This document shows positions 8,363 through 63,996 of a stretch of DNA of 64,000 nucleotides, in pieces; position 1 is the first letter of the stretch; every line of letters starts with the position of its first letter. Both the position numbers and the translations under genes were made by a program. The stretch is from positions 124,001 through 188,000 of IMG/VR virus record IMGVR_UViG_3300033984_000473; one strand, given 5' to 3'. A model generated the notes under the pieces. It saw only the letters and a list, made by a program, of their open reading frames with translations, did no database searches and was not told where the DNA came from.

Positions 8363-8878
8363 TTAATGCCTATCAGCTGGCACTACATTTATCTTGAAAG
8401 TTTTAATTCTTCCGCTTGAAATTAGCTTATCACCAAATGCTTTGAATATTGGAATATGTTCCAATCTATCATCCCATAGTTCAATCTCAGTAACCTGTGG
8501 GTACTTATGTAGTAAAGATTCAATTGTTTTCATCTTAGCCACTTCTGTTGCACCACCTCTGTTGAAATGGTATTCATCAAACTCTAGGTTTTTGCTATCT
8601 AAGATTTCTTTAACTAGGTCAGTAAGTAGAACCATACGACCAGTAAGCATAACCATAACAGTTGATTGGTCTTGTTTTTCTACATTGTAAGCATCAATGA
8701 CCATTGGTACACTTGGCATGTCAAATATTTTCATATCTAAGCTTAGTGGTCTACCCCACCATCCTGGAAAAGGCCAATCTCTACCTGTCTGTTCTTTGTA
8801 ATGTTTCTTACCAAATTCTGGTAATGGTGTATCAACCAGTGTTCCGTCAAAATCGAATATCGATAATTTTGTTTTCAT
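8363..8878 (-). CDS. HAD phosphatase, Swiss-Army-Knife RNA-repair-like
   Basis: FDFDGTL, WW, LTGR, WDDR motifs. Confidence 0.8.
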   Translation of the reverse strand: MKTKLSIFDFDGTLVDTPLPEFGKKHYKEQTGRDWPFPGWWGRPLSLDMKIFDMPSVPMVIDAYNVEKQDQSTVMVMLTGRMVLLTDLVKEILDSKNLEFDEYHFNRGGATEVAKMKTIESLLHKYPQVTEIELWDDRLEHIPIFKAFGDKLISSGRIKTFKINVVPADRH

Positions 8879-23748: not shown

Positions 23749-23750
23749 AG

Positions 23751-23930: not shown

Positions 23931-24019
23931 TAATGCTAAATTTAAAAATTGTTATTTAACAAAGGTACTAATACTTTTGTTAAAAAGCAAGAGAAACCTA
24001 AAAATTATAGTAAACTGTA

Positions 24020-25480: not shown

Positions 25481-25481
25481 T

Positions 25482-26476: not shown

Positions 26477-26488
26477 GTTTTTCTTTTT

Positions 26489-28054: not shown

Positions 28055-28130
28055 ATTGTTAAATTTTTTGTTCTTATTTGATACAAAGGTACTAAAAGTT
28101 TTTTGGATAACCAAATATTATATCGATTAT

Positions 28131-30951: not shown

Positions 30952-30978
30952 GTTTCTAATTTTATAATACAAAGGTAC

Positions 30979-33960: not shown

Positions 33961-34349
33961 TATGCTTCAGAGATTATTGATGAAACCAATTTGTTATCAG
34001 CCAACCCTTTGTAATCTCTACTAAATAACCCCATCATTTGACCAGCGTTAGTTAAACCAGCATCTTTGTAAGATTTAACAATAGTTCTGATTTGTTCTTC
34101 AGTCATAAGACTTGGTAAATAAGGTTCCATGTATGATAACTCGACCAAAGATTCTGGGTTGTTAGTTAGTTTAAGGGATTTTTCCATCTTACGTAAGATA
34201 ATCAAAACTGTTCCATCAGTTGTTACAGTTCCCCTACCTTCTTCGTTTTGGATTTCACTTTTCAATAGACCTAGAAAGTTTTTTCTTTCCATTTCTTTTG
34301 CTTTGAATGCTGTCAAGAAGTCAGCATTGATTTTTTCTTTTAAAGACAT
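33960..34349 (-). CDS. GatB/YqeY domain protein
   Basis: MSLKEKI..D...A.KA, YLP..MTEE, GQMMG, G.AD.K.VS. Confidence 0.85.
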   Translation of the reverse strand: MSLKEKINADFLTAFKAKEMERKNFLGLLKSEIQNEEGRGTVTTDGTVLIILRKMEKSLKLTNNPESLVELSYMEPYLPSLMTEEQIRTIVKSYKDAGLTNAGQMMGLFSRDYKGLADNKLVSSIISEA

Positions 34350-37592: not shown

Positions 37593-37619
37593 AAAAATGG
37601 GCCCATTGGGCCCTTTTTT
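37593..37619. terminator. bidirectional terminator
   Basis: A-run, GGGCCC-ATT-GGGCCC, T-run between convergent genes. Confidence 0.7.
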
Positions 37620-38181
37620 AATTTAATTCGTATGTCTTTTTTTCACCATTTGGTTTTGAATAAACCAAGTTATCAACTTTGATTGGCATGTCTTCCATAC
37701 CTTTCATTTTTTTTATGTATTTGTCAGCCGTTTTAGGTTTCAAATAAGCAATTGTTACGTGTGGGTGATAATCTGGAAAGTTATTTGTATTTGGAAATTT
37801 CTTAAACTTTGTATTCATTTTATGCATGTCATCACTATCAACGTCAAACTTTAAAACATCAAACTTTTCGTTGCTAAATGCTGATATCCCTTTGAACCCT
37901 ATCTTAGGTACTTTTACCTTATCAATTTCTTGTTCTATGTCTTCATCTGGTACGTCTGCATGCAAACCAAATAATATTGTCGCATGCGGCTCAGTTTCTC
38001 TACCATAGCTTGGGTCTTCTTTATCAATGTATAAATCTTCGTCATCAATTATGTCTTGTAACTTATCCCAATCTTCATTGGCTACATCCAAGAAAACCAT
38101 AAGACACCCATATTCGTTTTTATGGGTTTTGTGTTTACCTTCTTTTAATAAAGCCGCCCTTAATTCTTTTTTAATATTCAT
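37618..38181 (-). CDS. 2H phosphoesterase, Acb1/T4 57B-like
   Basis: two HxT motifs: EPHATILFG and YHPHVTIAY. Confidence 0.75.
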   Translation of the reverse strand: MNIKKELRAALLKEGKHKTHKNEYGCLMVFLDVANEDWDKLQDIIDDEDLYIDKEDPSYGRETEPHATILFGLHADVPDEDIEQEIDKVKVPKIGFKGISAFSNEKFDVLKFDVDSDDMHKMNTKFKKFPNTNNFPDYHPHVTIAYLKPKTADKYIKKMKGMEDMPIKVDNLVYSKPNGEKKTYELN

Positions 38182-40240: not shown

Positions 40241-40294
40241 AATTTTATTTTTTCTACAAATATACGAATTAATTCGACTGATTGCAAGTTTTTG

Positions 40295-40389
40295 AGCAGA
40301 AAAGAGGAATCGAACCTCTGAATCTTCACGTAGTCATACGATTTTTTCTCCCTTGGAATTGGGTGTTTTACCAACTAAACTATTTCTGC
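40295..40389 (-). ncRNA. atypical tRNA-Gly(TCC)-like RNA with imperfect anticodon stem and ~25-nt extra arm
   Basis: acceptor GCAGAAA/TTTCTGC, D-loop AGTTGGTA, T-arm AGAGG-TTCGATT-CCTCT; insert contains a CGTA..TACG hairpin. Confidence 0.6.
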
Positions 40390-40392: not shown

Positions 40393-41307
40393 TAACAAAG
40401 TGAGCGTAGCCACGTTCCTGTTTTATTTCATCATTTATCTTTTATAGAGTATTTTTGTTTTTGTTTTTAATAATATTGGTTCTAATTGCTGCTTCTCTCA
40501 TTTTTTCTCTAGCTTCTTCAGATAATACTCTTTTACCACCAACTAGTTTGCTTTTAACTAAATTTGATAGTTTAATTTTTTGTTCTTTACCATCTTCAGA
40601 ATCCCAATAATTTGTGATTTGTTTAGACATAAATTCTTTATATTCATCACCTCTTTCGAATAAACCACCATTAGGTATAAATCGACCATCTGAAATTGCT
40701 TTTTTTATCGAAGAACTTAAATTTTGCTTGTGTTCTTCAGTCCACAAATAATTAATAACACCTTCACCACCATCAGTTAAATTTAATAATGGTCCAGTTT
40801 TAATATCACGTCTTCCAATTTTCTTAATCATCAGTTTTTCAAATTCTAACGCTTCTAATTCATTTTCAGTTGTTAATATTTTTTCATAAAATATTTCAGA
40901 ATCTTTATTAATCATCTGTCTAATTTTAGATAAAACTGGTGATTTTAATTTGGTTCTTTTAGCTCGTCTGTAATGTTCATACATTCGTAATTTAGAACCC
41001 TTTCCAACATAAAATGGTGTTTCACCATCTTTTAAAACATAAACATAATACTCCATAATTTTCTACTTTATCTTAACTTATACCCGTTAGATATAAATAT
41101 CTTGATATTTTGAAAAAGCCACTACCCGTCTATCATCGCAATCCAAGTTCCCTTGCTAAGACTGTATGTGTTGCACCCCGTGTTGCGGTAGTAATAACGA
41201 TACTTCGTTGACAGTCCCACTTTTAGGCCTTCGTAGGTATCTCCTACCTCTTGGAGAGATGTCGTGAACTTCCTCTGTTGCCAGCGATGAATCCTCTTTC
41301 TTTGTTA
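40393..41307 (-). ncRNA. rnpB: RNase P RNA (divergent), interrupted by a GIY-YIG ORF; segments 41119-41307 and 40393-40441
   Basis: P1 TAACAAAG/CTTTGTTA, P2 TTCATCG/TGATGAA, P3 CTG-GCAA-CAG, P4 GAGGAAGTTCACG / ACAGGAACGTGGCT with bulged U, AGCAAG, GGGTAG and AGATAAATG conserved elements. Confidence 0.8.
40442..41056 (-). mobile_element. GIY-YIG homing endonuclease inside the RNase P RNA gene
   Basis: YYVY...FYVGKG...R, E..A..FE, GPLLNLTDGGEG, NUMOD-like tail; own ATATTTAT promoter. Confidence 0.85.
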
Positions 41308-43144: not shown

Positions 43145-43150
43145 TTCTCG

Positions 43151-43238
43151 TCTAGATAACGGGACTCGAACCCGCATAATGCTTTTAAACAATTCTCGAT
43201 TCCAAATCGAGTCGGCTTCCAATTGCCTTCATATCTAG
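43151..43238 (-). tRNA. tRNA-Pro(TGG) with unusually long variable arm
   Basis: CTCGA-TTTGGAA-TCGAG; ~19-nt variable region. Confidence 0.75.
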
Positions 43239-43602: not shown

Positions 43603-44037
43603 TTATGACTTTTTTTTAATTTTTTTTTGTTTTTTAATCTCATCCCTTATGTTTGCTGCTATTTCGTAGTCTTCATTCTCTACAGCTTCAGCTAATTTTT
43701 CATCTAATGTTTTTTCTAAGACAGGTTTTTCTGGTTTTATCGTTGTATATGGAATGTCAACCATCACCACTTTTACCAATTCACCACCAAAAGCATACCA
43801 TACTCTTTTCTCAAAATGGAAACCATCTTCTTCAAATGTCTCTATCTTGTCTGGCTCACCTAATTGCTCATCAATACTATCGATGTGTTCGATGTTATCA
43901 AGCATGTTGATAAGTCCTTTGATTTGTTCTTCTTTTTCAGCATCGAATTCTTTATTCTTAGCATCTTTTCTTAAAATCTTTTTTTTATTGTTCTTCCCTA
44001 AGAAGTCATTAAAAAGGTCGTCAAATTTATCTGTCAT
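43603..44037 (-). CDS. protein with C-terminal UvrB/UvrC (UVR) motif
   Basis: L..AVE.EDYE.AA.IRDEI. Confidence 0.75.
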   Translation of the reverse strand: MTDKFDDLFNDFLGKNNKKKILRKDAKNKEFDAEKEEQIKGLINMLDNIEHIDSIDEQLGEPDKIETFEEDGFHFEKRVWYAFGGELVKVVMVDIPYTTIKPEKPVLEKTLDEKLAEAVENEDYEIAANIRDEIKKQKKIKKKS

Positions 44038-44476
44038 TTTTTTTGATTTTATTTGTAATTTTTGTGTGCGTTTCTTTCGCATGATACTTAAACAATTCAA
44101 CTACGTTTATTCTATATAGATACATAAAAATACCAAAGAATGTTCCAGCCAAAGCATACATGATGCTCATTGTCATCCAGTAATCATTTGTTAATTGCAT
44201 GATACCATATACTACGATATCATAACCCAATGGGTTTAAAAATAACGCTAACGTTATCAATAAGTTTCCTATTGCTTGTTTTCCTATTTTAAAGAAGACA
44301 TAAGACAATAAAAATGATAGGAATGCCAACCCATAAAGAACGTGCATTGTACTCCAATAGTCGTTTGTTAACTGTGTCAGTTTGTAAACTAAAATGTCGA
44401 ACCCAAACGGGTTTAGAAAAGTCGCTATCATCAGACATGCTGTCCCTATCGCTTTTCTCGTTACTATTCTCTTCAC
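44027..44476 (-). CDS. membrane protein with internal tandem duplication
   Basis: two copies of AIG.....A.FLNP.G.DI.VY...QLTNDYW.TM...Y.LA. Confidence 0.75.
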   Translation of the reverse strand: MKRIVTRKAIGTACLMIATFLNPFGFDILVYKLTQLTNDYWSTMHVLYGLAFLSFLLSYVFFKIGKQAIGNLLITLALFLNPLGYDIVVYGIMQLTNDYWMTMSIMYALAGTFFGIFMYLYRINVVELFKYHAKETHTKITNKIKKNDR

Positions 44477-49265: not shown

Positions 49266-50399
49266 TTAGAACATATCTCCGAACCCACCAGATTTCAATT
49301 TGTCACTTGATGACAAGTTGTATTCTGGGTTAGAGTATTGTTTAGCATCTGGAATGATGTCAGCACCAACTTTAATCTTGTCAGCAACAGCGTTCAAGTT
49401 TGCGTACAATTCATCAGAATCCAAGGTATAGTTGCTTGTGATACTTTCGATATCTTTCAAGTTACCAGCGGTAATTGCGATATCAGCAGCAATCGTAGAT
49501 GTAACAACATCCAAAGCGTAATCAAATTCCCAACCTTTAGCGAAGCCCATTGCTGATTTAGCGGCAGACGTAGCAGCGTTTGATTTTTGACCAAAGTCAT
49601 AGTCTTTTTTAAGCATGATGATAGTCGCATCAAAGTCTTGGATTTTAATATCCATTGCAGTTTCAACTAGCGTAAGCTTTTGTCCCATTTTCTTCATAAT
49701 GTTAGCACGAGAACCATATTTTTGAACGAAATCTTTTGATTGGTTCAATTGGTTTGCTACACGTTGTGATTCAGCCAACAACTTTTGTAAGCTAGAAGCA
49801 TAATCAACATAAGCATCTTCACCTTTAGCCGCAACACCTTTTTCTTTAACCATTTCATCCATGGCTTGTTTAATAGTTCCAGCTTTACCTTGCAAGGATA
49901 GTATTTTGTTTTGACCTTGTTCAGCTTCTTTTTCTGACCTGTCAGCTTCAATTTCCATTTCTTGTTTCAATGACACAATGTTTTGTTTTGCTACTCTAAA
50001 TGTTTGTTGGTTTACAAGCATTTTTTGTCTTTCAATTTCTAACTGAGCAAATGGGTCATACTTGATAAGTGCTTTGTGAATTGCTCTTGTGAATACACGA
50101 ATACCCTTAACAATTACTGGTGCCATAATAACTCCAGCAACAATAAATACACCCGTAGCGAATACTGCTAATAATTGACCAATCGCTTGGAATACTGGTG
50201 GTAACACGTATGTCCATGTTAAATAACCAACACCGATAAGTGCCGCTAATTTAAAGAACCAGAACATGTTTTTCTCTCCTTTTCTAAAGGTATCAACCTT
50301 TGTTGAAATTTCATTCTCACTATAATTCTTCATCATAGGTAAGTTCATCAAATTTGCATTAAATGCAGTTTGTGTCGATGTTTGTGTTTGTGTTTGCAT
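49266..50399 (-). CDS. two-TM coiled-coil protein
   Basis: two TM helices then a long heptad region. Confidence 0.75.
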   Translation of the reverse strand: MQTQTQTSTQTAFNANLMNLPMMKNYSENEISTKVDTFRKGEKNMFWFFKLAALIGVGYLTWTYVLPPVFQAIGQLLAVFATGVFIVAGVIMAPVIVKGIRVFTRAIHKALIKYDPFAQLEIERQKMLVNQQTFRVAKQNIVSLKQEMEIEADRSEKEAEQGQNKILSLQGKAGTIKQAMDEMVKEKGVAAKGEDAYVDYASSLQKLLAESQRVANQLNQSKDFVQKYGSRANIMKKMGQKLTLVETAMDIKIQDFDATIIMLKKDYDFGQKSNAATSAAKSAMGFAKGWEFDYALDVVTSTIAADIAITAGNLKDIESITSNYTLDSDELYANLNAVADKIKVGADIIPDAKQYSNPEYNLSSSDKLKSGGFGDMF

Positions 50400-50408: not shown

Positions 50409-51146
50409 TTATTTTAAATTGTTATTAATTCCTTGTTTTACTAATTCGATAGAATTAACTATCTTATCTTTAGCCATGTTGTTGGCTGTTAATTTGTTAT
50501 CAACTTCACTAATCATTGGACCATATTTGCTATCGATTACGGATAGTTTGTTTTGACGGTCAGCGATTTGAATTTGTAATTGCTCCAATTGTTGTTTCAT
50601 CAAATCCAATTCACCCATAAGTGATTGATTTTCATGGTTTTTTTGGTCAACAATCTCTTGTCTTTTAGAATTCCCTTTTACTACGAAATCATTGTAAACC
50701 TTATTGATTTCATTTAGATAAAAATCTGATTGTGAAATCAATTTGCTTTTGTTTATGGTTTTATCCATACCAGAACCCATCGCAAATGCCATAGTGTATA
50801 TCTGAGGATTGTCAACCCCAGCACCGATAACTGCTTGATAGAATTCATAGAAATCATATCCAGGTTGATTCAAAGAATCAAACCCATTGGTATATGTCGC
50901 TAAAGCTTTTGCTAATTGTTCTTCGCTAACACCTTGAGTTGATGGTGTTGAAGTAAATGTTGGTGTAACAACTGCTGGTTCTGATTTTGGAAAACCAAAG
51001 CTGCTGAATACACTAGTTTCCTCTGGTTGAGGCGTTGAACTTGGAAACTTAGTTACAGACGTTGCTGCTGGACTAGGAGTAGTTTGTTCTACTGGTTTAT
51101 CGTTAGGTGTTTCTTCACTAACAATAAATAAATCTTTTAATCCCAT
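50409..51146 (-). CDS. coiled-coil hypothetical protein
   Basis: MGLKDLF, P/S/T linker, N.PG.D.YEF, coiled coil. Confidence 0.75.
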   Translation of the reverse strand: MGLKDLFIVSEETPNDKPVEQTTPSPAATSVTKFPSSTPQPEETSVFSSFGFPKSEPAVVTPTFTSTPSTQGVSEEQLAKALATYTNGFDSLNQPGYDFYEFYQAVIGAGVDNPQIYTMAFAMGSGMDKTINKSKLISQSDFYLNEINKVYNDFVVKGNSKRQEIVDQKNHENQSLMGELDLMKQQLEQLQIQIADRQNKLSVIDSKYGPMISEVDNKLTANNMAKDKIVNSIELVKQGINNNLK

Positions 51147-51746: not shown

Positions 51747-51993
51747 AAGAACAGTGACTTACGGGAATCTCACCTTGATTCTAGAAATCGTTCCTTTAAC
51801 TTCGCCCCCTGTATCATTGGAGATTTAACCCAATTAGATGCCCATGGTCAGCCACAGCTCTTTTTCTCATATCCCAAATGTGGGAAAGGGAGCCACCTTT
51901 AAAGTACGTAAGTATGTTCTTATTAATTGATTTGATTCTGCTTTACATAGACCATCGAAGGACGATATACATACATTGGACCAAACCTATTTG

Positions 51994-52110
51994 TACAAAG
52001 AGTAGGATTCGAACCTACGTAACTCCCTACGTCATGCTTCCAAACTGAAAAGGAATCGAACCTTACACACGAATTCAAGGGGGAGTGCTTTACCACTAAG
52101 CTATCTCCGT
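51994..52110 (-). ncRNA. tRNA-like RNA with ~50-nt insert in the anticodon loop containing a second T-arm
   Basis: acceptor ACGGAGA/TCTTTGT, D-arm, CTCCC/GGGAG stem, inner AAGG-TTCGATT-CCTT, outer GTAGG-TTCGAAT-CCTAC. Confidence 0.65.
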
Positions 52111-52199
52111 ATTTGAGGCTGAGGCCTCTGCGTTGTGTAGACTATTCATCATCTATTACAATTCTAGCTTTCCTTTCTCAAGGGAACAACACAATAAGT

Positions 52200-52346
52200 T
52201 AGACAACAAGATTAACTTTTTTCTTTTTCGTGCTCTAACCATTAAGCTAACCGCCCAGTGTCTTAGGACAGTATGGGACTCGAACCCATATCACGAGCTT
52301 AACAGGCTATAGATTTTTTGTTGCTGAAATAATCTTTCAATGTCTA
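52200..52346 (-). ncRNA. circularly permuted tRNA-like RNA (YrlA/Y-RNA-like), member B (Asn GUU loop)
   Basis: terminal stem, TTCAGCAA, AGC-CTGTTAA-GCT, T-arm, loop-closed acceptor ACTGTCC/GGGCGGT, D-arm, AAAAAAGTTAATCTTG. Confidence 0.75.
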
Positions 52347-52390
52347 GTTACAAACTAAGCAATTTCTCACTTAGCTTATATTTTTGGGTA

Positions 52391-53026
52391 TTATTTTCCT
52401 TGTCCAGAAACGTTAATTGACCCTACTGAACCAGCTTTAGCTCTTTCGATACCAGCAGCTCTTTCAGCATCTAATTGTAAATACAATTTAGTTACTTGTT
52501 CACTTAAGAACTCGTTTTGGTTAGCCAACGTACCAATCTTAGCAGCGTTTTCAGCAGCAATAGCTTTATTCTCTGAGTGAATCAATTTGATTTCATTCTC
52601 GTATTGAGATTTAAGGCTAGAAACTACCGTAGCAACTTCTTTTTTGATTAATCCATCAGTGTTAGACTTAACCTCGTCTAACTCTTTACGCAATGAACTC
52701 AATTCACTAGCTGGAATTACTGTTTTCCCAACGCTTGTTAAGTATTCATTAACAACACGGTCTGTGTTAGCTCTGAAACTTAAATCTAAATCAACTTTCA
52801 ATTGACGCTCTTTTTCAGCAAAAGCTACATCTAATGATATAATCGCTTCTTCTTTGTTAGCAACTTGTAAAGTTAATTCTTCAGCTTGCTCAACCATTTT
52901 ATTGATTGTGTTAGTGGCAGAAGCTAATTCGCTTACTGCTTTCGTAATTTGTTGTGCAGCTTGTCCTAAGACAATCTCTGTGCTAGCACTTGCTTTCTTT
53001 GCGGGTGTTGTTTTTGTTACAGCCAT
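52391..53026 (-). CDS. coiled-coil hypothetical protein
   Basis: 211 aa, heptad-rich, own promoter. Confidence 0.75.
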   Translation of the reverse strand: MAVTKTTPAKKASASTEIVLGQAAQQITKAVSELASATNTINKMVEQAEELTLQVANKEEAIISLDVAFAEKERQLKVDLDLSFRANTDRVVNEYLTSVGKTVIPASELSSLRKELDEVKSNTDGLIKKEVATVVSSLKSQYENEIKLIHSENKAIAAENAAKIGTLANQNEFLSEQVTKLYLQLDAERAAGIERAKAGSVGSINVSGQGK

Positions 53027-53193
53027 TTTTTTTTTCTTTGTTTTTTTGTTTATTATGTTATTATGTTATTATGTTATTGTATTATTCTCTACTTATTATA
53101 CTACAAAGATACTACATTTTTCATTAAAAGTCAAGTAAAAATGAATATTTTTTTAATCTTTTTTACACTTTTAATAAGCTGTAAATCAAGCTG

Positions 53194-53556
53194 TTACCCA
53201 GCCAAATACATACTATTTGACATCAACGCATGTCTTGCAAAATCGGTCTCATCTTGGACGTATTCATTGAACTCAGATTGCTCTAATTCAACTATGTCTT
53301 CGACTTCCCAATTGAACATATCAATGATTTTGTCATAGTTATTGCTGTTGTCAACTGGTGTTGTTAAATCTAATCTAACTTTCATATCTCCAGCTTCAAC
53401 TTTTTTGGTAATGTCTGCTAATTGTTTAAGTGCTTCTTTCTTGTAAGCAACAACGGCTTTGGTATAAGCTTCAATGTGTTGTGCTTTATTTTCTTGAATC
53501 TTAGCAATTAAATCTGCTTTGTTAACCTTGATGGTTCTGTTTCCGTTTCTTCTCAT
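53194..53556 (-). CDS. hypothetical protein
   Basis: ORF in operon. Confidence 0.75.
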   Translation of the reverse strand: MRRNGNRTIKVNKADLIAKIQENKAQHIEAYTKAVVAYKKEALKQLADITKKVEAGDMKVRLDLTTPVDNSNNYDKIIDMFNWEVEDIVELEQSEFNEYVQDETDFARHALMSNSMYLAG

Positions 53557-53577
53557 TGGAATTTATTTTTACGTATG

Positions 53578-53955
53578 TTATTGTATGATATCTCCGACTT
53601 CAACATTTAAGAACAAATCCTCATCAATGTCTTTTTTAATCGTTAACGTTTCGTTAGGCCTTTTGATTGTAATGTAGTTGTCTTTTAAATCTGCTTTTTC
53701 GTTTTCTGAACGACAATTAGCACAATCTTTATTTACAACAATACCGACTGGTAATTTAGTTTCAGAACTTGACCAATAACGCTTATCAGCTACCTTAACG
53801 TCACTTTCTGTAGGTTCGTCTTGATTGCGATAATCAGAAGAATCTGAAAGGATTACAGCATCATAAGTTTCAACGTTTTCTGTTGGTTGTTCAGTTTTAG
53901 GTTTACATGAAACAGTTAAACCTAAAACCAAAGCTACTAAAAACATTTTTTTCAT
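53578..53955 (-). CDS. lipoprotein
   Basis: LTVSC lipobox. Confidence 0.75.
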   Translation of the reverse strand: MKKMFLVALVLGLTVSCKPKTEQPTENVETYDAVILSDSSDYRNQDEPTESDVKVADKRYWSSSETKLPVGIVVNKDCANCRSENEKADLKDNYITIKRPNETLTIKKDIDEDLFLNVEVGDIIQ

Positions 53956-54128
53956 TATGTTCTACTTTTTAGAACTTCAATTTCTTTGTTGATTCTTTTG
54001 ATATCAGAATCATTCAAAGGAACTTTAACGTCAGTTGTTTTCTTTTGTGTTTTCACACCACTTTTTAATTGCTTCTCAAGCATTTCGATTACTCTAGACT
54101 GTCTAGAACGTTTTGCAGCTGTTGCCAT
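53955..54128 (-). CDS. hypothetical basic protein (57 aa, not in ORF track)
   Basis: MATAAKRSRQSRVIEMLEKQLKSG...EIEVLKSRT. Confidence 0.65.
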   Translation of the reverse strand: MATAAKRSRQSRVIEMLEKQLKSGVKTQKKTTDVKVPLNDSDIKRINKEIEVLKSRT

Positions 54129-54147
54129 AGTTAAATTTATTTATTTG

Positions 54148-54252
54148 TAGATGGTACAGGATTCGAACCTGTGAATCTCTTTGTATAGGTATCATACATA
54201 CCACATCAAGACTTTATGTATGCTCAACCTTAAGCCACTCGGTCAACCGTCT
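54148..54252 (-). ncRNA. tRNA-like RNA with extended anticodon arm and no canonical anticodon loop
   Basis: acceptor AGACGGT/ACCATCT, D-loop GAGTGGCTTAA, CATACATA/TATGTATG stem, T-arm ACAGG-TTCGAAT-CCTGT. Confidence 0.55.
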
Positions 54253-54376
54253 ATTTAATGAGAATTTGGGCCATCGGTATCTCATAATTGTTAGTCCTTC
54301 CTTAGCTAACACCCTTACCCAAGCCGTTCCTATGGGCTGGTAAATTTCACTATACTATAGGAGTCAAGTGAATACT

Positions 54377-54452
54377 TGGTGGTACCGAGTGGATTCGAAC
54401 CACTGACACCCGCATCTTCAGTGCGGTGCTCTACCAACTGAGCTACGGTACC
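54377..54452 (-). tRNA. tRNA-Phe(GAA) with encoded CCA
   Basis: CCGCA-CTGAAGA-TGCGG. Confidence 0.93.
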
Positions 54453-54596
54453 TTTTTATCTCGTAGTTTTTAAGGCTCAAGTGATTACATTGCTGCTCAC
54501 TCTAAGTAACCGTGATATAGTACAAACCTATGATATTTCTATACTACAAAGATACTAATCTTTTTTTAAAGTTGCAACCTTTGTATCGTTTTTTTT

Positions 54597-55082
54597 TTAA
54601 CTTTTTCTAGCTAAAATATACTCATATTGTGAGTCAGTATTTGTATTGCCATATACATAGTTTGGAATTCTAGTTAAACACATGTCTTCTAGAACTTTAT
54701 CCAATGGACAACCTTCACCATATTCAAAATAGATAGCACCATATTCAACATAGCTCTCATCAGAATCAAAAGCTTCAACTTCGTTGATATCTCTAACATT
54801 TATGTTTTCATCACTGATAACACAAATTGATTCATAACCTTTTCTATATTTAAAAGCACCTATTTGCTCAAATAACCCTTTACCAATTATGTATTCATCT
54901 TCTTTTGATAAATCTGGAACTACAACCATGTATTCACATTCCAATAAGTCTTTGTGACTATATAGACCACCTTTGAATTCAACTGTTTGTATATTAAATT
55001 GGTTAAGGATTTGGCGAACTCTAGTAACCACATCTGGGTTAGCTCTATTAGACTTCGCCAAATAAACCTTTGGTATGTTCAT
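54597..55082 (-). CDS. hypothetical protein
   Basis: ORF in operon. Confidence 0.7.
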   Translation of the reverse strand: MNIPKVYLAKSNRANPDVVTRVRQILNQFNIQTVEFKGGLYSHKDLLECEYMVVVPDLSKEDEYIIGKGLFEQIGAFKYRKGYESICVISDENINVRDINEVEAFDSDESYVEYGAIYFEYGEGCPLDKVLEDMCLTRIPNYVYGNTNTDSQYEYILARKS

Positions 55083-55429
55083 TATTTCTTACCTTTGGTA
55101 GCTGGAGCCTCGTCAGCAAACCATTCATCATAGATTGATTGTGCTTCCACAAGTTGAACTTCTTTCAAAGCTAAATCCATTTTTGTTCTGTGTAATTCAG
55201 CCACCCATTTAGCAGCGTTGAAATCAGCACCACCTGGACGTAGAGAGTAAGTGTTCTCTGGAGCCAAGTCAGTCAAGTCATTTAACTTGCTATTCAATTG
55301 CAATTTCTCTTTTCTTAGGTTTGCGATGAAAGACTCAACTTCCAATACGGCAGCATCTGCTAAATTTTTCGCTCTGTTTCCTAATGTTGCTGAACTATCC
55401 GCTGATAGCATTTGTGCAAATTTACTCAT
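55082..55429 (-). CDS. hypothetical protein
   Basis: ORF behind a promoter box. Confidence 0.75.
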   Translation of the reverse strand: MSKFAQMLSADSSATLGNRAKNLADAAVLEVESFIANLRKEKLQLNSKLNDLTDLAPENTYSLRPGGADFNAAKWVAELHRTKMDLALKEVQLVEAQSIYDEWFADEAPATKGKK

Positions 55430-55526
55430 AATTTTCTAGTTTTAAATTAAATTGTTTTTGTTTATTTTTTAGATTACAAAGGTATGAAATGTTTTTGACC
55501 TGTGCAAGTTTTTTTTAAAGTTTTTT

Positions 55527-55682
55527 TTAGTCGAGGTAAATATCAAACCATTCAACAGCGTAGAAGTCTAACCACATTCCCATTTCTAAATAGAATTGGA
55601 AAATTCTCTCGTCTCCACCGATTTCCATACGTAGTTTCTCTATGATGTAATCGGCCATGTATTGTAATATCTTTCTTTTCAT
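55527..55682 (-). CDS. hypothetical protein (51 aa, not in ORF track)
   Basis: MKRKILQYMADYIIEKL...FDIYLD; ATG lies 4 nt after the TAnnTTTG box, so possibly near-leaderless. Confidence 0.55.
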   Translation of the reverse strand: MKRKILQYMADYIIEKLRMEIGGDERIFQFYLEMGMWLDFYAVEWFDIYLD

Positions 55683-55709
55683 AATACAAAGGTACTAATT
55701 AGTTTTTTA

Positions 55710-56087
55710 TTATCCAAACAATGTGTTGTGTTTTTTTGAAAATTTTTTAGCAATTCTTTTATAAAACTCTGTTAGTAGCGAACTAGGAATCTTAATCCCT
55801 TCATCTTCAAATATATCCAAGATTTCTTTAGGTGTAAACGTTCCTTCAACAATACCATCTGACCATTGGTCACTCCAAAGTCCCCAAGACTTTTTACCTA
55901 CAATAACAGCTTTTACTATATTAGGGTGTCTTGATACTATTGGGACTCCATTTCTAAAATCTCCATTGTCAAATTTTCTGAATGTGAATTTTCCTTCTGT
56001 TTCGTTGACATCAAATTCAACCTTTACGATAGCACCACAAAAAGATAGGATGCCTTTCCTATTTGATTTAAGGAAGAAGTTGAACAT
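55710..56087 (-). CDS. hypothetical protein
   Basis: ORF; the frame stays open 36 codons further upstream. Confidence 0.6.
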   Translation of the reverse strand: MFNFFLKSNRKGILSFCGAIVKVEFDVNETEGKFTFRKFDNGDFRNGVPIVSRHPNIVKAVIVGKKSWGLWSDQWSDGIVEGTFTPKEILDIFEDEGIKIPSSLLTEFYKRIAKKFSKKHNTLFG

Positions 56088-56238
56088 TTCATTGAAATTA
56101 TCGGAATACTTGGTTAGCTTTTTTTGATGTCTGCTACCAGTTTCCTTTTTACGTAACTCTATACGTTCTTGTCTTGTTAACGGGCTCCCAAGCGGTCACC
56201 CCCATTTTGTGTGTTTTTCATAACATTTATATTTGTTG

Positions 56239-56311
56239 TTGAGGAAGAGGGACTTGAACCCTACTCTACCACCCGTCTAGGTGGTCTTCTAACCAGTTAA
56301 AGTATTCCCCA
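56239..56311 (-). tRNA. atypical tRNA with 6-nt anticodon loop (TAGACG; Val-like or undetermined)
   Basis: acceptor TGGGGAA/TTCCTCA, D- and T-arms present, CCACC/GGTGG stem. Confidence 0.5.
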
Positions 56312-56400
56312 AAATTACCAGAGGTTGCCAGATAGAATTTATAATACCTGTGTTTTCAACCTTTCTCCGTAAATAAAATTACCAGAAGTTACCAGATTTG

Positions 56401-56519
56401 CAGCGGCACCAGGAATCGAACCTAGAACAATGGCGTGACAGGCTATATTGAATGCTGAACGTAATCTTCTTAATCAGATTAACTTTTTTAACATTGTTAT
56501 ACCATTTAACTATACCGCT
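56401..56519 (-). ncRNA. tRNA-Asp-like RNA with the Y-like module inserted in the anticodon arm, member C
   Basis: AGCGGTA/TGCCGCT acceptor, G73, D and T arms; insert AAAAAAGTTAATCT-loop-AGATTACGTTCAGCA-...-GC-CTGTCAC-GC. Confidence 0.7.
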
Positions 56520-56521
56520 AG

Positions 56522-56594
56522 TGGAGCCACGGAGATTCGAACTCCGTTCTGCTGGGTGCAAGCCAACTATTTTCGCCCAGTAAACTATGACCCC
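56522..56594 (-). tRNA. tRNA-Ala(TGC)
   Basis: GTTGG-CTTGCAC-CCAGC; G3:U70 identity pair. Confidence 0.88.
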
Positions 56595-56600
56595 AATTTT

Positions 56601-56648
56601 CTAATTCTACGCTTACAATATGTAGTTCTATGAATTAGTAACAGTCTC
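56601..56648 (-). repeat. repeated structured spacer motif, copy 2
   Basis: GAGACTGTTA-CTAATTC-ATAG...GCGTA-GAATTAG. Confidence 0.7.
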
Positions 56649-56659
56649 ATCTGTAACTA

Positions 56660-57298
56660 TTATTCTCTACCTTGAAACCATCCTTGTAATAGGTAATTTT
56701 CAAGTTCTTCTTTTTTAATCTTTTTGTTAATACTATCTTTGGTTATCCAACATGTACCATATTGGCTATTTGTCTTACCAGTTCCAGTACCCTTTTTCTT
56801 TTCAGACATCAATTTTTTAGTTTCTTCTGAATGATTTCTATCATTCCAATCGAACCTTTTTATTTTACCAGTTAACAACATATTTGTCATATGTGTTGAA
56901 GCTTTATCTCTATGTATTTTAGCAAATTCTTCATCATTTTTTAATTTGTCAGCAAAAGCTTTTCCAGCACAAACTGAACGATGTTTTTGTTGTTCATCGC
57001 TGATAAAACCACCACTTCCACCACCCATTAAATTCATACAGTTTTTATCTGTTATCATTTCTGGTGTGATAGTTTTTATCTCAGCTTCAACCAACAATTC
57101 TCTTGTTTCAAAGAACTCTAAAATTTCTTTATTGAAATTCTCAATCCCATACTTACGCATTGAAGCTCTTAATCTTCTACCGCTACCTAAGTAACCATCA
57201 TTTATGTCATTCGTACTATGCATCCCTACATAATATCTTCCTGTTACATTACATGTTGTTTTATACAAATAATGTATTGTTTTTTCTTTTCTTGTCAT
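56660..57298 (-). mobile_element. GIY-YIG homing endonuclease (Seg-like, NUMOD3) inside tRNA operon 2
   Basis: YLYKTT...G.YYVGMH, YLGSG, YG..NF.KEIL, HSEETK..MS; own ATATTTAT promoter. Confidence 0.87.
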
Positions 57299-57350
57299 TG
57301 TCGTATATCTTTTATTATAAATATACGACAAAGTACAAAAAAGTCAAGGG

Positions 57351-57422
57351 CGGTCTATGAGAGAATCGAACTCTCATCTCTACCGTGACAGGGTAGCATC
57401 CTAGCCGTTGAACGAATAGACC
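57351..57422 (-). tRNA. tRNA-Asp(GTC)
   Basis: CTACC-CTGTCAC-GGTAG, G73. Confidence 0.9.
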
Positions 57423-57503: not shown

Positions 57504-57511
57504 ATTTTTTG

Positions 57512-57584
57512 CGGAACACACGGGAGTCGAACCCGCAATCTCTTAAGTGACAGTCAAGGATGTTACCATCAACACCTCTGTTCC
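57512..57584 (-). tRNA. tRNA-Asp(GTC), divergent
   Basis: CTTGA-CTGTCAC-TTAAG, G73. Confidence 0.85.
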
Positions 57585-61993: not shown

Positions 61994-63205
61994 TTAAATG
62001 TTAGTTGCCGAGATTGGCAAGTTATAGAAATCTCTTCTTATTGTTACTAAAAGTGCATCTACTAATCCTGGGTTTACCTTGTTTGGTAAATCAGATTTAT
62101 CAAATACCTCGTCCATATTTGCTATGGCTTCATCGGCCATGACAATCAACCCATCTAAATCAACTTCACCACGTCTAATCTTAAGAAGTTCTTCAGCATC
62201 TGGTCGTCTAACGATGATACCTTTACCTTCTCCGATTTCTGTAGCCATATTGATAAGTCGCATACAATGCATCATGTTCTTACCATCAATCTTTTGACCA
62301 TGACCTTGAACTTCAACGTATCTGGTTACATTTCTTTTATCTAACCATTCTTGGTATTCTTTAAAGTCTTTACAGTGCTCTGAATAACCATCTTTGTTAT
62401 AAACGATTGTACTGATTGTTTTTTCACCTTTAGGAATACTAGAAAGACGTAGTTGATTTGAGATACCATAGTTAATGACCCCATCTTCATCTTCATGACC
62501 AGTGTTTACAAGTCCTTTATATCCAAGACCCATTGGCTTACCAGCATCTTTTAGAACAGCCTTTCTTTGGTTGCGTTCTACTTCTGAAAATTTATCAGAG
62601 TGACACATTTCACCAACACTGTCATAAAATAAAGCATACGTATCCCTAGCGTTAGGTATGTTTACAGCACCTATGAATTTTTCATCGTACTTCCCAGAGT
62701 TCCATATTTTCCATGGAATTGATTTCTCACCTTCAAGTACATAACAGAAATCCAATAGGTCTTTACGAACTACTTTGTCCTGTTCCCAGTTTTGTTTCTT
62801 GTTAAGTCCTTTGGCTTTTTTGATTTGCTGTCTAGCGTAACCACCGAAAGAATCTTTACACGCTTTGGTGATGAAATCTTCCTTGTGAGCAATGATAATG
62901 TCAAACAAAGGGTTCTTTGTGACGATACAATCTTCTGGACTGTTAAGGAGCTCAAGAACAGTTGGGTTGTTTGTACTCATAAGTTCTAAGAACCTTTTAA
63001 GTTCCCAACCCGTCCAATCTTTATTGATATTCAACTGTTCAACATATCCAGTACCCAAGATATTATCAATAGGCAAGATGTAAACGAATTTTTTATCCAC
63101 ATCAGACGTTGGTGTCTGCGTACCATAGGCTTGACTACCAATAATGCATTCAAAAAGAATCAATCCATTCTCTTTAAGGTAATCGTATGTAATTTTCTGT
63201 GTCAT
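61994..63205 (-). CDS. nucleotidyltransferase (YcgL/DNA pol beta-like family)
   Basis: GSQAYGT.TP.SDVD, NP..LE.L, K.MMH..RL. Confidence 0.85.
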   Translation of the reverse strand: MTQKITYDYLKENGLILFECIIGSQAYGTQTPTSDVDKKFVYILPIDNILGTGYVEQLNINKDWTGWELKRFLELMSTNNPTVLELLNSPEDCIVTKNPLFDIIIAHKEDFITKACKDSFGGYARQQIKKAKGLNKKQNWEQDKVVRKDLLDFCYVLEGEKSIPWKIWNSGKYDEKFIGAVNIPNARDTYALFYDSVGEMCHSDKFSEVERNQRKAVLKDAGKPMGLGYKGLVNTGHEDEDGVINYGISNQLRLSSIPKGEKTISTIVYNKDGYSEHCKDFKEYQEWLDKRNVTRYVEVQGHGQKIDGKNMMHCMRLINMATEIGEGKGIIVRRPDAEELLKIRRGEVDLDGLIVMADEAIANMDEVFDKSDLPNKVNPGLVDALLVTIRRDFYNLPISATNI

Positions 63206-63288
63206 ATTCTTAATTTTTAACAAAGGTATGTATAATTTATTAAACTACCAAACATTTTTACATTTTAATTCCAGTAAGATAGATAAAT

Positions 63289-63996
63289 TTACTTAAATTT
63301 ACGTTCTACTTCCATCCTCTTTAAACATTCGAAAGGTGTTTCGTTGGGGTTAAGTGTATAATTACATCCAATAACACCACCCTTCCAACTACCAGTTCTT
63401 TCACCAACTTCTTCATTAAAGTTTATCTCAATAACATGTCTAGTTTTAATTTGTAAACCAAACCATCTCTTCCAATATCTTTTAACTTGATGAATCGTTG
63501 CTTTTATATTTTGAATGTCGCCAGAATTTAATTGATAAGCATAATCATGCACTTCATATAATATTTTATCGGACCATTTATCTGAATCCCAAAAATCATC
63601 ACCTTTTTCTTCTTTTTTCCAACCATCTTTAAGTAAGTATTCAGTTTTTAAATGGTTATACGCCCATGGAAAATCAAATGATAGTTTATGGAAACCTCTA
63701 ACCCAAAATTGGTTTGGAAATCCACTGTCAATATGGTAAAACATAAGACCATATGTTTTTGATTCAGAAGTATTACCTCTACCAGTATCATACGGTAAAT
63801 GAATATATAAATTACCCCAAGAATAAAAACATAATATCAACGATATCGGTATTAACCATAAACTAATGAATGGTAACACTAATAAAAGTAACGTTGTTAA
63901 ATTAGTGTTAATTTGTGGTCTAGGGTCGAAATAACCATTATTTTCATATGTTAAATAGAAACCATTACCTTTACTACTTTTAGGATAAAAAGACAC
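63289..63996 (-). CDS. hypothetical membrane protein (5' end probably beyond the window edge)
   Basis: TM segment; C-terminal F..EVGERTGSWKGG..GC. Confidence 0.65.
   Translation of the reverse strand: MSFYPKSSKGNGFYLTYENNGYFDPRPQINTNLTTLLLLVLPFISLWLIPISLILCFYSWGNLYIHLPYDTGRGNTSESKTYGLMFYHIDSGFPNQFWVRGFHKLSFDFPWAYNHLKTEYLLKDGWKKEEKGDDFWDSDKWSDKILYEVHDYAYQLNSGDIQNIKATIHQVKRYWKRWFGLQIKTRHVIEINFNEEVGERTGSWKGGVIGCNYTLNPNETPFECLKRMEVERKFK

What the first reader, a model, noticed from the sequence alone, without database searches (positions are those of the whole stretch)
52200..56519. Two tRNA-like RNAs that are circular permutations of each other
Element B (52200-52346) reads: stem 5' arm, TTCAGCA, TATAGC-CTGTTAA-GC (Asn loop), T-arm, acceptor closed by a loop, D-arm, AAAAAAGTTAATCT. 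Element C (56401-56519) has the same parts but is opened at the acceptor: acceptor, D-arm, AAAAAAGTTAATCT, loop, AGATTA-CG-TTCAGCA, TATAGC-CTGTCAC-GC (Asp loop), T-arm, acceptor with G73. Established: the T / closed-acceptor / D order in B is the architecture of bacterial YrlA Y RNAs, which bind Ro60/Rsr. C looks like the same fold with free acceptor ends, possibly chargeable, and could be a tRNA-to-Y-RNA intermediate. No Ro60 or RtcB gene is visible in this window.
Basis: partly seen in the sequence, partly recalled or inferred. Interest (0 to 1): 0.82.

Follow-up and report, generated by a model that had tools for sequence, protein, structure and literature searches.

The report
Permuted and split tRNA genes in phage
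A giant bacteriophage carries one tRNA gene whose two halves are in swapped order and another interrupted by the same short conserved insert, an arrangement known from a few algae and one archaeon and, as far as I could find, not reported for viruses of bacteria.

Summary
On the minus strand, element B (52346-52200) runs leader, tRNA positions 29-73, 8-nt spacer, positions 1-28, trailer. Element C (56519-56401) is a colinear tRNA with a 48-nt insert after position 29. Rejoined in silico, they give canonical tRNA-Asn(GUU) and tRNA-Asp(GUC).

Both carry the same module: A-run, UAAUCU, loop or distal helix, AGAUUA, UUCAGCA, A-rich linker.

About 40 such elements, permuted or insert-bearing, occur in roughly 30 contigs of one clade of uncultivated jumbo phages, probably of Bacteroidota. 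Acceptor stems, the leader/trailer helix and the 15:48 tertiary pair covary. None of 12 core-pattern matches in 185,579 cellular genomes lies in a tRNA.

B is not YrlA: 24.7 bits against a threshold of 69, no Ro60-binding motif, no TROVE gene in about 91 kb, and a complete anticodon loop.

Best reading: a circularly permuted tRNA gene and an intron-type tRNA gene sharing an undescribed, non-BHB intervening sequence. It would be removed by cleavage and ligation. Rnl1- and Rnl2-type ligases lie 6-13 kb beyond the window. No nuclease was identified and there are no transcript data.

The parts
52341..52346 (-). B leader: 3' strand of distal helix P2 (UAGACA). It pairs with the trailer at 52200-52205.
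   Evidence: sequence. The RNAfold MFE pairs leader and trailer. P2 changes sequence but stays complementary in relatives: GGG/CCC, AAAGG/CCUUU, UAGGU/ACCUA.
52330..52335 (-). B leader: 3' strand of helix P1 (AGAUUA)
   Evidence: The same hexamer occurs in C and in most relatives. P1 is 98.5% paired over 22 distinct copies.
52322..52328 (-). B leader: conserved single-stranded motif UUCAGCA
   Evidence: Invariant in alignments A1 and A2.
52309..52321 (-). B leader: A-rich linker between UUCAGCA and the 3' junction
   Evidence: Its length and sequence vary among relatives.
52265..52308 (-). B: 3' half of tRNA-Asn, positions 29-73. Anticodon loop CUGUUAA (GUU at 52301-52303), T arm 52273-52289, acceptor 3' strand 52266-52272, U73 at 52265.
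   Evidence: ARAGORN on the rejoined halves. The junction is 28/29 by comparison with L003 and L005.
52257..52264 (-). B: 8-nt spacer closing the acceptor stem. Expected to be opened by RNase P and 3' trimming (inferred).
   Evidence: The spacer is 3-15 nt and unconserved in 12 orthologues, while the 7-bp acceptor stem is kept at 6-7/7 pairs.
52229..52256 (-). B: 5' half of tRNA-Asn, positions 1-28 (acceptor 5' strand GGGCGGU, D arm, C27 G28)
   Evidence: U8, A14, the D-loop GG and a covarying 15:48 pair are present.
52215..52228 (-). B trailer: A-rich run (AAAAAGAAAAAAGU)
52209..52214 (-). B trailer: 5' strand of P1 (UAAUCU)
52200..52205 (-). B trailer: 5' strand of P2 (UGUCUA)
56492..56519 (-). 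C exon 1: tRNA-Asp positions 1-29
   Evidence: Rfam tRNA 42.3 bits. ARAGORN on the spliced form.
56444..56491 (-). C: 48-nt intervening sequence in the 5' strand of the anticodon stem. A-run 56483-56489, P1 56476-56481 with 56462-56467, UUCAGCA 56453-56459, linker 56444-56452.
   Evidence: Model R1 gives 57.3 bits.
56401..56443 (-). C exon 2: tRNA-Asp positions 30-73 (GUC at 56437-56439, G73 at 56401)
8363..8878 (-). HAD_SAK_1 phosphatase of RNA-repair type. A possible end-healing enzyme; the link to B and C is inferred only.
   Evidence: Pfam PF10307, 56.3 bits.
37618..38181 (-). 2H phosphoesterase (LigT/Acb1-like). It could open 2',3'-cyclic phosphate ends; the link is inferred only.
   Evidence: Pfam PF13563, 34.1 bits.
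61994..63223 (-). RlaP (RNA-ligase-associated Pol-beta nucleotidyltransferase). The link is inferred only.
   Evidence: Pfam PF10127, 82 bits. Rnl2-type and Rnl1-type ligase genes lie about 6-7 and 12-13 kb beyond the window end on the same contig.

Best explanation
B is a circularly permuted tRNA gene and C is a colinear tRNA gene. Both are interrupted at nearly the same point of the anticodon stem's 5' strand (28/29 in B, 29/30 in C) by one conserved intervening module: A-run, helix P1 UAAUCU/AGAUUA, UUCAGCA, A-rich linker.

Proposed pathway:
1. The precursor folds into the normal L-shape, with the module protruding from the anticodon stem. In B the leader and trailer pair through P1 and P2, so the two ends sit side by side (shown: the sequences allow this and relatives keep it).
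2. The module is cut away at both junctions and the exon ends are ligated. For C this gives a linear tRNA-Asp. For B it gives a circular intermediate (inferred).
3. In B the 8-nt spacer closing the 7-bp acceptor stem is opened by RNase P and 3' trimming, and CCA is added, as for the short spacers between the neighbouring tandem tRNA genes (inferred).

Ligation is most likely done by the phage's own ATP-dependent RNA ligases. Rnl2-type enzymes seal nicks in duplex RNA and Rnl1-type enzymes seal anticodon-loop breaks. The phage's 2H and HAD phosphoesterases would heal the ends if needed (inferred). The cutting activity is unknown. Because P1 and its flanks are conserved in sequence and no exon-guide pairing was found, I favour a protein that recognises the module.

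The products would be working tRNAs. B would supply the only tRNA-Asn seen in this window, which holds about 30 tRNA genes.
For: - Rejoining gives perfect cloverleaves with U33, a purine at 37 and a 5-bp anticodon stem.
- The same logic works for about 30 further elements in relatives. Anticodons include GUU, AUU, CUU, UUU, CCU, GUC and UUC; junctions fall at 26/27, 28/29, 29/30 and 31-34.
- In 12 permuted orthologues there are 8 different acceptor stems, each 6-7/7 paired with its own partner against 3.8/7 in cross-pairings. The closing spacer is 3-15 nt and unconserved.
- The Levitt pair covaries: A15:U48 in B and L032, G15:C48 in the 11 others. U8, A14 and the D-loop GG are kept.
- The leader/trailer helix P2 changes sequence but keeps pairing. 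P1 is 98.5% paired, with U-A to C-G and A-U to U-A exchanges.
- The module is more conserved than the neighbouring protein. AAGATTATTTCAGCAA is invariant across all 12 aligned orthologues, among them loci whose 211-aa neighbour is 66-79% identical to the window's.
- Permuted and colinear forms of the same tRNA lineage both exist: the GAGCACG|... scaffold is colinear in L075.
- No other tRNA-Asn and no other unassigned T arm, apart from one odd tRNA-like element, is in the window.
- The same genome (100% identical over 12.5 kb) encodes PF09414 (41.8 bits) and PF09511 (52.6 bits) RNA ligases. The window holds RlaP, Thg1-like, HAD_SAK_1, 2H and RNase II/R genes.
- The module core in a tRNA context is absent from 185,579 cellular genomes.
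Against: - There are no transcript, end-mapping or charging data.
- No endonuclease was identified. There is no bulge-helix-bulge motif and no EndA-like Pfam hit.
- The ligases and healing enzymes have an ordinary explanation in jumbo phages, namely repair of tRNAs cut by host anticodon nucleases (PMC7824862). Their presence is permissive, not specific.
- Junction positions and the distances from the module to the junctions vary, which is awkward for a simple measuring enzyme.
- The discriminator base varies (U, C, A, G) among orthologues. Some orthologues have a 31-39 or 27-43 mismatch.
- No uninterrupted orthologue and no spliced junction was found in viral or metagenome contigs.
- The function of the conserved UUCAGCA and A-run is unexplained.
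Confidence: 0.65

Rival explanations
1. The RNAs are never spliced. B, and perhaps C, are stable tRNA mimics in the manner of YrlA/Y RNAs. They would use the closed acceptor, the L-shape and the P1/P2 stem to bind a partner: a Ro60-like protein elsewhere in the genome, a host enzyme, or a host anticodon nuclease for which they act as decoys.
For: - The T / closed-acceptor / D order is shared with YrlA, and the YrlA model gives a weak full-length alignment (24.7 bits, E 0.049 over 4227 families).
- The P1 stem and its flanks are conserved in sequence, as a protein-binding site would be.
- The discriminator base is not conserved.
- The anticodon varies within one scaffold, as might be expected of decoys for different nucleases.
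- The genome is rich in RNA-repair and counter-defence genes.
Against: - The score is far below the YrlA threshold, there is no GNCGAA motif, and no TROVE gene lies in about 91 kb.
- YrlA lacks an anticodon loop. These elements keep canonical 7-nt loops with U33 and a purine at 37.
- The exon ends complete a 5-bp anticodon stem only on joining.
- The acceptor stem is 7 bp and closed by a spacer of variable length. That is the feature that makes M. smegmatis YrlA an RNase P substrate.
- The colinear form C would be an odd design for a closed mimic.
Confidence: 0.15
2. The module is itself catalytic: a small self-cleaving or self-splicing RNA. Its cuts would leave 2',3'-cyclic phosphate and 5'-OH ends, which the phage's 2H/HAD enzymes and ligases heal and seal. 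No dedicated endonuclease would then be needed.
For: - A roughly 35-nt core (A-run, P1, UUCAGCA) is conserved in sequence.
- No candidate endonuclease gene was found.
- The phage has the enzymes needed to heal cyclic-phosphate ends.
- The module is absent from cellular genomes, so host factors need not have co-evolved with it.
Against: - No Rfam ribozyme family matches the region, even at E up to 10.
- Two cuts at variable distances from the core are needed.
- The one candidate guide pairing (exon-1 end with GCA-NN) is no better than with shuffled partners: 3.03 against 3.19 pairs.
- The core has a single 6-7-bp helix, which is little structure for a ribozyme.
Confidence: 0.12
3. B and C are non-functional debris: tRNA genes broken by insertion of a small DNA element with terminal inverted repeats, or by the homing endonucleases that sit among the tRNA genes. 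B would be the leftover of a tandem duplication.
For: - The module contains an inverted repeat (TAATCT/AGATTA).
- GIY-YIG-type ORFs lie within the tRNA clusters at 40442-41056 and 56660-57331.
- Two intact tRNA-Asp(GUC) genes already exist at 57349-57422 and 57511-57584.
- A tandem-duplication origin of B is plausible in any case.
Against: - The syntenic element is conserved in phages whose flanking protein is only 59-79% identical.
- Compensatory changes occur in the acceptor, T, P2 and 15:48 pairs.
- G-U pairs work only on the transcribed strand.
- The anticodon loops are intact.
- The pairing outside the inverted repeat (P2) changes sequence freely, which a protein-bound DNA end would not.
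Confidence: 0.05

Closest known systems
Circularly permuted tRNA genes of Cyanidioschyzon merolae, some green algae and nucleomorphs, and the archaeon Thermofilum pendens (Soma 2007; Maruyama 2010; Chan 2011, as summarised in PMC4090602, and bioRxiv 10.1101/312249)
   Same: The 3' half lies upstream of the 5' half on one strand. The acceptor stem is closed by a short spacer. The leader and trailer pair so that the ends meet inside the tRNA body. Rejoining gives a canonical cloverleaf. Colinear genes in the same genome carry the same kind of intervening sequence. A tandem-duplication origin is plausible.
   Different: Those precursors form a bulge-helix-bulge motif cut by the archaeal/eukaryal splicing endonuclease. 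Here there is no BHB, the junctions are flanked by long A-rich single strands and a sequence-conserved hairpin module, and no EndA-like gene was seen. The carrier is a virus of bacteria, a domain where protein-spliced tRNA introns are not known (PMC4090602).
Archaeal non-canonical tRNA introns and split tRNAs (BHB-dependent)
   Same: Short introns without ORFs sit at positions other than 37/38, including in the anticodon stem. The same motif is used for introns and for joining separate or permuted halves.
   Different: The recognition element is different (a conserved sequence module instead of a BHB). The introns of this phage clade are near-identical in sequence, like copies of one element.
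YrlA / bacterial Y RNAs (Rfam RF02553; PMC4201824)
   Same: T arm, closed acceptor-like stem and D arm in that order. A tRNA-like L-shape with a 15:48 pair. The ends pair into a stem. A 7-bp acceptor form (M. smegmatis) is cut by RNase P and receives CCA. A proposed origin from dimeric tRNA transcripts.
   Different: B has a complete anticodon loop and a stem completed only by joining the ends. It lacks the Ro60-site motif, has no adjacent TROVE gene, and scores well below the family threshold.
Phage T4 tRNA repair (PrrC cut, Pnkp healing, Rnl1 sealing) and Rnl2 nick sealing
   Same: A phage-encoded heal-and-seal toolkit acting on breaks in the tRNA anticodon arm. This phage encodes Rnl1- and Rnl2-type ligases, a HAD phosphatase, a 2H phosphoesterase and RlaP.
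   Different: In T4 the break is inflicted by a host defence nuclease on an intact host tRNA. Here the discontinuity is written into the phage's own genes.
Group I introns in bacterial and phage tRNA or protein genes
   Same: Intervening sequences in the anticodon region of tRNA genes in the bacterial world.
   Different: Those are over 200 nt with a P1-P9 core and sit in the anticodon loop. This insert is about 45-50 nt with one hairpin and has no Rfam intron match.

Membership tests
YrlA / Y RNA (RF02553) | Reaches the Rfam gathering score (69 bits) | tested here: not met
   24.7 bits, E 0.049, at 52200-52324 on the minus strand. No match for C.
YrlA / Y RNA (RF02553) | Encoded next to a Ro60/TROVE gene | tested here: not met
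   No TROVE Pfam hit in any window ORF of 140 aa or more, nor among called genes in the 27 kb beyond the window end. The other ~140 kb of the 233-kb contig was not examined.
YrlA / Y RNA (RF02553) | Ro60-binding stem with the conserved GNCGAAN0-1G motif on the 5' strand (PMC4201824) | tested here: not met
   The leader at 52346-52309 has no such motif. The conserved leader motif is AGAUUA-UU-UCAGCA instead.
YrlA / Y RNA (RF02553) | T arm, closed acceptor-like stem-loop, D arm in that order, with tRNA tertiary pairs | tested here: met
YrlA / Y RNA (RF02553) | No anticodon loop: the anticodon-stem position leads into the Ro60-binding stem (bioRxiv 10.1101/312249) | tested here: not met
   B has the loop CUGUUAA closed by G30-C40 and C31-G39 (A29-U41 too if the junction is 28/29). 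Its orthologues keep 7-nt loops with U33.
tRNA (RF00005) | Cloverleaf reaching the Rfam gathering score or accepted by ARAGORN | tested here: met
   C scores 42.3 bits (threshold 29) with the insert skipped. Rejoined B and spliced C are called tRNA-Asn(gtt) and tRNA-Asp(gtc) by ARAGORN. Raw B is not detected.
Permuted tRNA genes (C. merolae / T. pendens type) | 3' half upstream of 5' half on the same strand, short spacer, rejoined halves form a canonical tRNA | tested here: met
Permuted tRNA genes (C. merolae / T. pendens type) | Leader and trailer form a bulge-helix-bulge motif at the junction | tested here: not met
   The leader and trailer pair (P1, P2), but the junctions lie 9-22 nt away in A-rich single strands. 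No 3-nt bulges separated by 4 bp are visible, by inspection of B and C and in the MFE folds. This was not searched systematically in all relatives.
Permuted tRNA genes (C. merolae / T. pendens type) | Maturation through a circular RNA intermediate | not testable with these tools
   Needs RT-PCR or RNA-seq from infected cells.
Permuted tRNA genes (C. merolae / T. pendens type) | A splicing endonuclease (EndA/Sen) is available | tested here: not met
   No tRNA_int_endo Pfam hit in the window ORFs or the flanking 27 kb. Bacteria are not known to have one. A divergent enzyme cannot be excluded.
Group I intron in tRNA | More than 200 nt with a P1-P9 core; Rfam Intron_gpI match | tested here: not met
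   The insert is 48 nt. No such match at E up to 10.
Known small self-cleaving ribozymes (hammerhead, twister, pistol, hatchet, etc.) | Match to the Rfam family model | tested here: not met
   No ribozyme family among the matches at E up to 10 in 51900-56700.

The most novel reading that the evidence does not exclude
A clade of jumbo phages of bacteria has its own class of tRNA intervening sequence: a roughly 45-nt sequence-conserved module that is neither group I/II nor BHB. The module spreads among tRNA genes, tolerates circular permutation of the gene, and is removed by a phage-specific cut-and-ligate pathway using an unknown nuclease or the RNA itself plus Rnl1/Rnl2-type ligases. This would be the first enzyme-spliced tRNA introns and the first permuted tRNA genes in the bacterial world. 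It would also give phage RNA ligases a second, housekeeping role.
Probability: 0.5. Interest if true: 0.9.

Novelty: new variant of a known kind. Interest (0 to 1): 0.85.

Why it matters
- Permuted tRNA genes have been a curiosity of a few algae and one archaeon, always tied to the BHB splicing endonuclease. Finding them, together with colinear genes carrying the same insert, conserved across dozens of phage genomes that infect bacteria implies a cut-and-ligate tRNA maturation route where none is known.
- It offers a concrete physiological substrate for phage Rnl1/Rnl2, RlaP and Thg1-like enzymes beyond damage repair.
- It shows that standard tRNA finders miss part of phage tRNA repertoires. 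Here the only tRNA-Asn candidate was invisible to ARAGORN and to Rfam at threshold.
- It provides a living example of the permuted-tRNA state from which YrlA-type Y RNAs have been proposed to derive.
- The conserved module is a compact, testable RNA element: it is either a protein-binding site or a ribozyme.

Tried and rejected
1. YrlA membership: below threshold, motif absent, no TROVE gene (Pfam scans).
2. BHB motif: not present in B or C, by inspection and in the folds.
3. Known ribozyme or other Rfam family for the module: none at E up to 10.
4. A guide-like helix between the end of exon 1 and GCA-NN of the UUCAGCA motif. It looked good for the Asp lineage (AAUGU/GCAUU, UAUGU/GCAUA). Over 36 distinct elements it is no better than with permuted partners: 3.03 against 3.19 pairs. 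Rejected.
5. Reading tandem permuted units as one long-intron gene. The 5' half of unit 1 pairs with its own upstream 3' half (7/7), not with the downstream one (4/7, counted by hand from the sequence). Rejected. The roughly 26-bit model hits spanning two units are a by-product.
6. Distal helix P2 statistics: own partner 5.5 pairs, against 3.8 (cross) and 4.1 (shuffled). This is supportive but weak in A/U-rich sequence. I rely on the explicit sequence exchanges instead.
7. Cellular homologues: 12 pattern matches in genome contigs, none in a tRNA and about the number I estimated for chance.
8. Uninterrupted orthologue or spliced product: 0 matches for the B junction in viral and metagenome contigs and for the C junction in metagenome contigs.
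9. Isolated or annotated relatives: none in GenBank phages.
10. Neighbouring conserved ORFs (377 aa at 49266-50399, 245 aa at 50409-51146, 211 aa at 52391-53026) as candidate nucleases: no informative family, PDB or Atlas match. Left open.
11. The exact-sequence look-up for the RlaP ORF failed, probably because of start-codon choice. The neighbouring ORF worked.
12. Literature: no paper on permuted or protein-spliced tRNA genes in phages in the held library.

Full report
**What the window is.** All genes run on the minus strand. The window holds about 30 tRNA or tRNA-like genes in clusters at 40-43.3 kb and 52-60 kb. It is part of IMG/VR contig UViG_3300033984_000473 (232,931 bp), about contig positions 124,001-188,000. 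An ENA assembly is 100% identical over the 12.5 kb of overlap. No related isolate exists in GenBank phages. The Bacteroidota -7 promoter motif TAnnTTTG is enriched, 138 against 97 +/- 11 expected, and sits upstream of minus-strand genes. Homologues of a neighbouring protein are labelled mostly Bacteroidota. This is therefore an uncultivated jumbo phage, probably of Bacteroidota.

**The observation.** B runs leader, anticodon hairpin, T arm, acceptor 3' strand, U73, 8-nt spacer, acceptor 5' strand, D arm, C27 G28, trailer. C runs acceptor, D arm, A27 U28 G29, 48-nt insert, G30 C31, anticodon loop, T arm, acceptor, G73. The insert of C and the trailer plus leader of B carry the same motifs: AAAAAAG-U-UAAUCU, then AGAUUA-(CG or U)-UUCAGCA, then an A-rich linker. 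The exact 14-mer occurs only at these two sites.

ARAGORN sees nothing in raw B. It calls tRNA-Asn(gtt) when B's 5' half is placed before its 3' half, and tRNA-Asp(gtc) when the 48 nt are removed from C. Both have 5-bp anticodon stems and 7-nt loops. Rfam's tRNA model scores C at 42.3 bits by skipping the insert.

**Comparative evidence.** The 211-aa gene just upstream of B brought in 17 related loci with 59-98% protein identity. In most of them a permuted tRNA sits at the same place, and several have a second permuted tRNA directly after it.

A pattern for the module plus a T loop found 91 stretches in IMG/VR. After checking for the complementary P1 strand and an A-run, 46 distinct candidate elements remained, 30 scored as permuted and 16 as insert-type; a few insert-type calls are artefacts of tandem units (see below), leaving about 40. 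They come from about 30 contigs, most sharing gene order with this window.

Rejoining in silico gives ARAGORN-accepted tRNAs for most of them:
- The B lineage (GAGCACG | AGC-CUNNUAA-GCUCG) has junction 28/29 and anticodons GUU, AUU, CUU, UUU or CCU.
- The C lineage has junction 29/30 with GUC or UUC.
- Others are broken at 26/27 or at 31-34.
- A colinear, insert-bearing copy of the B-lineage scaffold exists (L075).

**Structure is under selection at the RNA level.**
- Twelve B orthologues have eight different acceptor stems. Each pairs 6-7/7 with its own partner across a spacer of 3-15 unconserved nucleotides, against 3.8/7 in cross-pairings.
- T stems vary with compensation.
- The tertiary 15:48 pair is A:U in B and L032 and G:C in the 11 others. 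U8, A14 and the D-loop GG are invariant.
- The distal leader/trailer helix differs in sequence but stays complementary: UAGACA/UGUCUA, GGG/CCC, AAAGG/CCUUU, UAGGU/ACCUA, and UAGGU/GCCUA with a G-U pair that works only in the transcript.
- P1 is 98.5% paired in 22 distinct copies, with a few double changes, but it is mostly conserved in sequence.
- AAGAUUAUUUCAGCAA is invariant across all 12 aligned orthologues, among them loci whose neighbouring protein is only 66-79% identical to the window's.

**Not YrlA.**
- The YrlA model aligns B end to end at only 24.7 bits against a gathering score of 69.
- The defining 5'-strand motif GNCGAAN0-1G and the adjacent Ro60 gene (PMC4201824) are absent.
- No TROVE, RtcB or EndA Pfam hit occurs in any window ORF of 140 aa or more, nor in the 27 kb beyond the window end.
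- YrlA lacks an anticodon loop, whereas B keeps one.

The resemblance is real at the level of architecture. The YrlA literature itself compares YrlA with permuted pre-tRNAs and notes that a 7-bp acceptor makes one YrlA an RNase P substrate that then receives CCA. B has such a 7-bp stem.

**How it probably works.** What is shown is that the sequences encode two halves that make a canonical tRNA only after the module is removed and the ends are joined, and that evolution preserves this. The rest is inferred:
- cleavage at both junctions;
- ligation, giving a circle in the case of B;
- opening of the acceptor spacer by RNase P and 3' trimming;
- CCA addition.

The same genome encodes an Rnl2-type ligase (PF09414, 41.8 bits) about 6-7 kb beyond the window end. 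It also encodes an Rnl1-type ligase (PF09511, 52.6 bits) about 12-13 kb beyond it. At least one of the two ligases appears in the truncated hit lists for 12 of 19 module-bearing contigs of 50 kb or more (my tally).

The window adds these RNA-end enzymes:
- RlaP, 61994-63223
- a Thg1-like enzyme, 17901-18671
- a HAD_SAK_1 phosphatase, 8363-8878
- a 2H phosphoesterase, 37618-38181
- an RNase II/R, 5852-7771

A nick at 28/29 in a duplex is the preferred substrate of Rnl2-type enzymes, and a break in the anticodon loop is that of Rnl1 (established for the T4 enzymes). These genes are also what a jumbo phage carries for tRNA repair (PMC7824862), so they permit the pathway rather than prove it.

The nuclease is unknown. 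There is no BHB, no known ribozyme match and no consistent guide pairing. The sequence-conserved hairpin with conserved flanks suggests a protein-recognition site. The 12 core-pattern matches in 185,579 cellular genomes are about the number I estimated for chance, and none lies in a tRNA. That suggests the recognising factor is phage-encoded or is the RNA itself.

**Weak points.**
- There are no expression data.
- No spliced junction or uninterrupted orthologue is in the sequence collections.
- The discriminator base varies, and B has G3-U70, the alanine identity pair.
- The distances from module to junction vary.
- About 140 kb of the genome was not examined.

**Novelty.** I found no report of permuted or enzyme-spliced tRNA genes in phages or bacteria in the held literature. 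Reviews state that protein-spliced tRNA introns are absent from bacteria and that permuted tRNA genes are known from algae and one archaeon. I file this as a new variant of a known kind: a permuted or intron-bearing tRNA gene with a different junction element, in a new biological setting. I put about an even chance on it representing a new class of intron and processing pathway.

Noticed in passing
window 51994-52110 (-): A tRNA (Rfam 54 bits) with a 44-50-nt insert at or after the anticodon loop. The insert holds a second T-arm-like hairpin (GUAAGG-UUCGAUU-CCUUUU) and ends in AUGACGUA. The same insert type sits in the tRNA that follows the permuted gene in L010 and L013, with covarying anticodon stems. 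It looks like a second, different intervening-sequence family. ARAGORN -i calls it tRNA(uga) with a 44-nt intron at position 37.
   Followed up: partly
window 54130-54260 (-): A tRNA-like element with a good acceptor stem, a 3-bp D stem of class II type and a perfect T arm, but an unreadable anticodon and variable region. Rfam tRNA gives only 17 bits and ARAGORN misses it. It may be another disrupted tRNA.
   Followed up: partly
window 56238-56311 (-): A tRNA with stem CCACC/GGUGG and a 6-nt (or 8-nt) anticodon loop UAGACG. ARAGORN reports a 4-base anticodon. The orthologue in L002 has a different loop.
   Followed up: no
window 40294-40389 (-) and 43150-43238 (-): Two over-long tRNAs (96 and 89 nt) with inserts in the variable region. 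The first contains AUGACUACGU, resembling the AUGACGUA motif of the insert at 51994-52110.
   Followed up: no
window 52355-52374 (-), between the 211-aa gene and B: A conserved hairpin directly after the stop codon. The stem changes with compensation among relatives (CUAAG/CUUAG, CUACG/CGUAG, CACG/CGUG, UAUG/CAUA). The 10-nt loop UGRGRAAYUG is conserved, even in relatives that lack the permuted tRNA (L015, L018). It could be a terminator or a processing signal. B has no promoter of its own and seems co-transcribed with the gene.
   Followed up: partly
window 52250-52272 (-), and orthologues: B's acceptor stem has G3-U70, the main alanine identity element, and U73. G3-U70 recurs in several orthologues but not all. 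The discriminator varies, and the anticodon of the same scaffold switches among GUU, AUU, CUU, UUU and CCU. The amino-acid identity of these tRNAs is therefore uncertain.
   Followed up: partly
window 19481-30972 (-): A block of NAD-related genes: PRPP synthetase (19481-20575), Sir2 (21702-22454), Macro (24020-24520), NADAR (24983-25519), NAMPT (26489-28114) and an NMNAT-like/Nudix gene (29968-30972). An Acb3-like gene lies at 63289-63996. These look like counter-defence functions.
   Followed up: no
window 9798-10292 (-), 33960-34349 (-), 17901-18671 (-): Translation-related phage genes: an IF3 homologue, a YqeY/GatB-like protein and a Thg1-like 3'-5' polymerase.
   Followed up: no
window 40442-41056 (-), 43603-44100 (-), 56660-57331 (-): ORFs resembling GIY-YIG or UvrC-motif homing endonucleases are interspersed among the tRNA genes, as the seg genes are in T4. 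They are a possible driver of the duplications and rearrangements that produce permuted genes.
   Followed up: no
L004, L005, L007, L008 (e.g. L004:10840-11080): A second permuted tRNA directly follows the first in several relatives. It is broken at 26/27. It is of class I shape but carries anticodons GUA, AGA or GGA, and its acceptor stem has G3-U70.
   Followed up: partly
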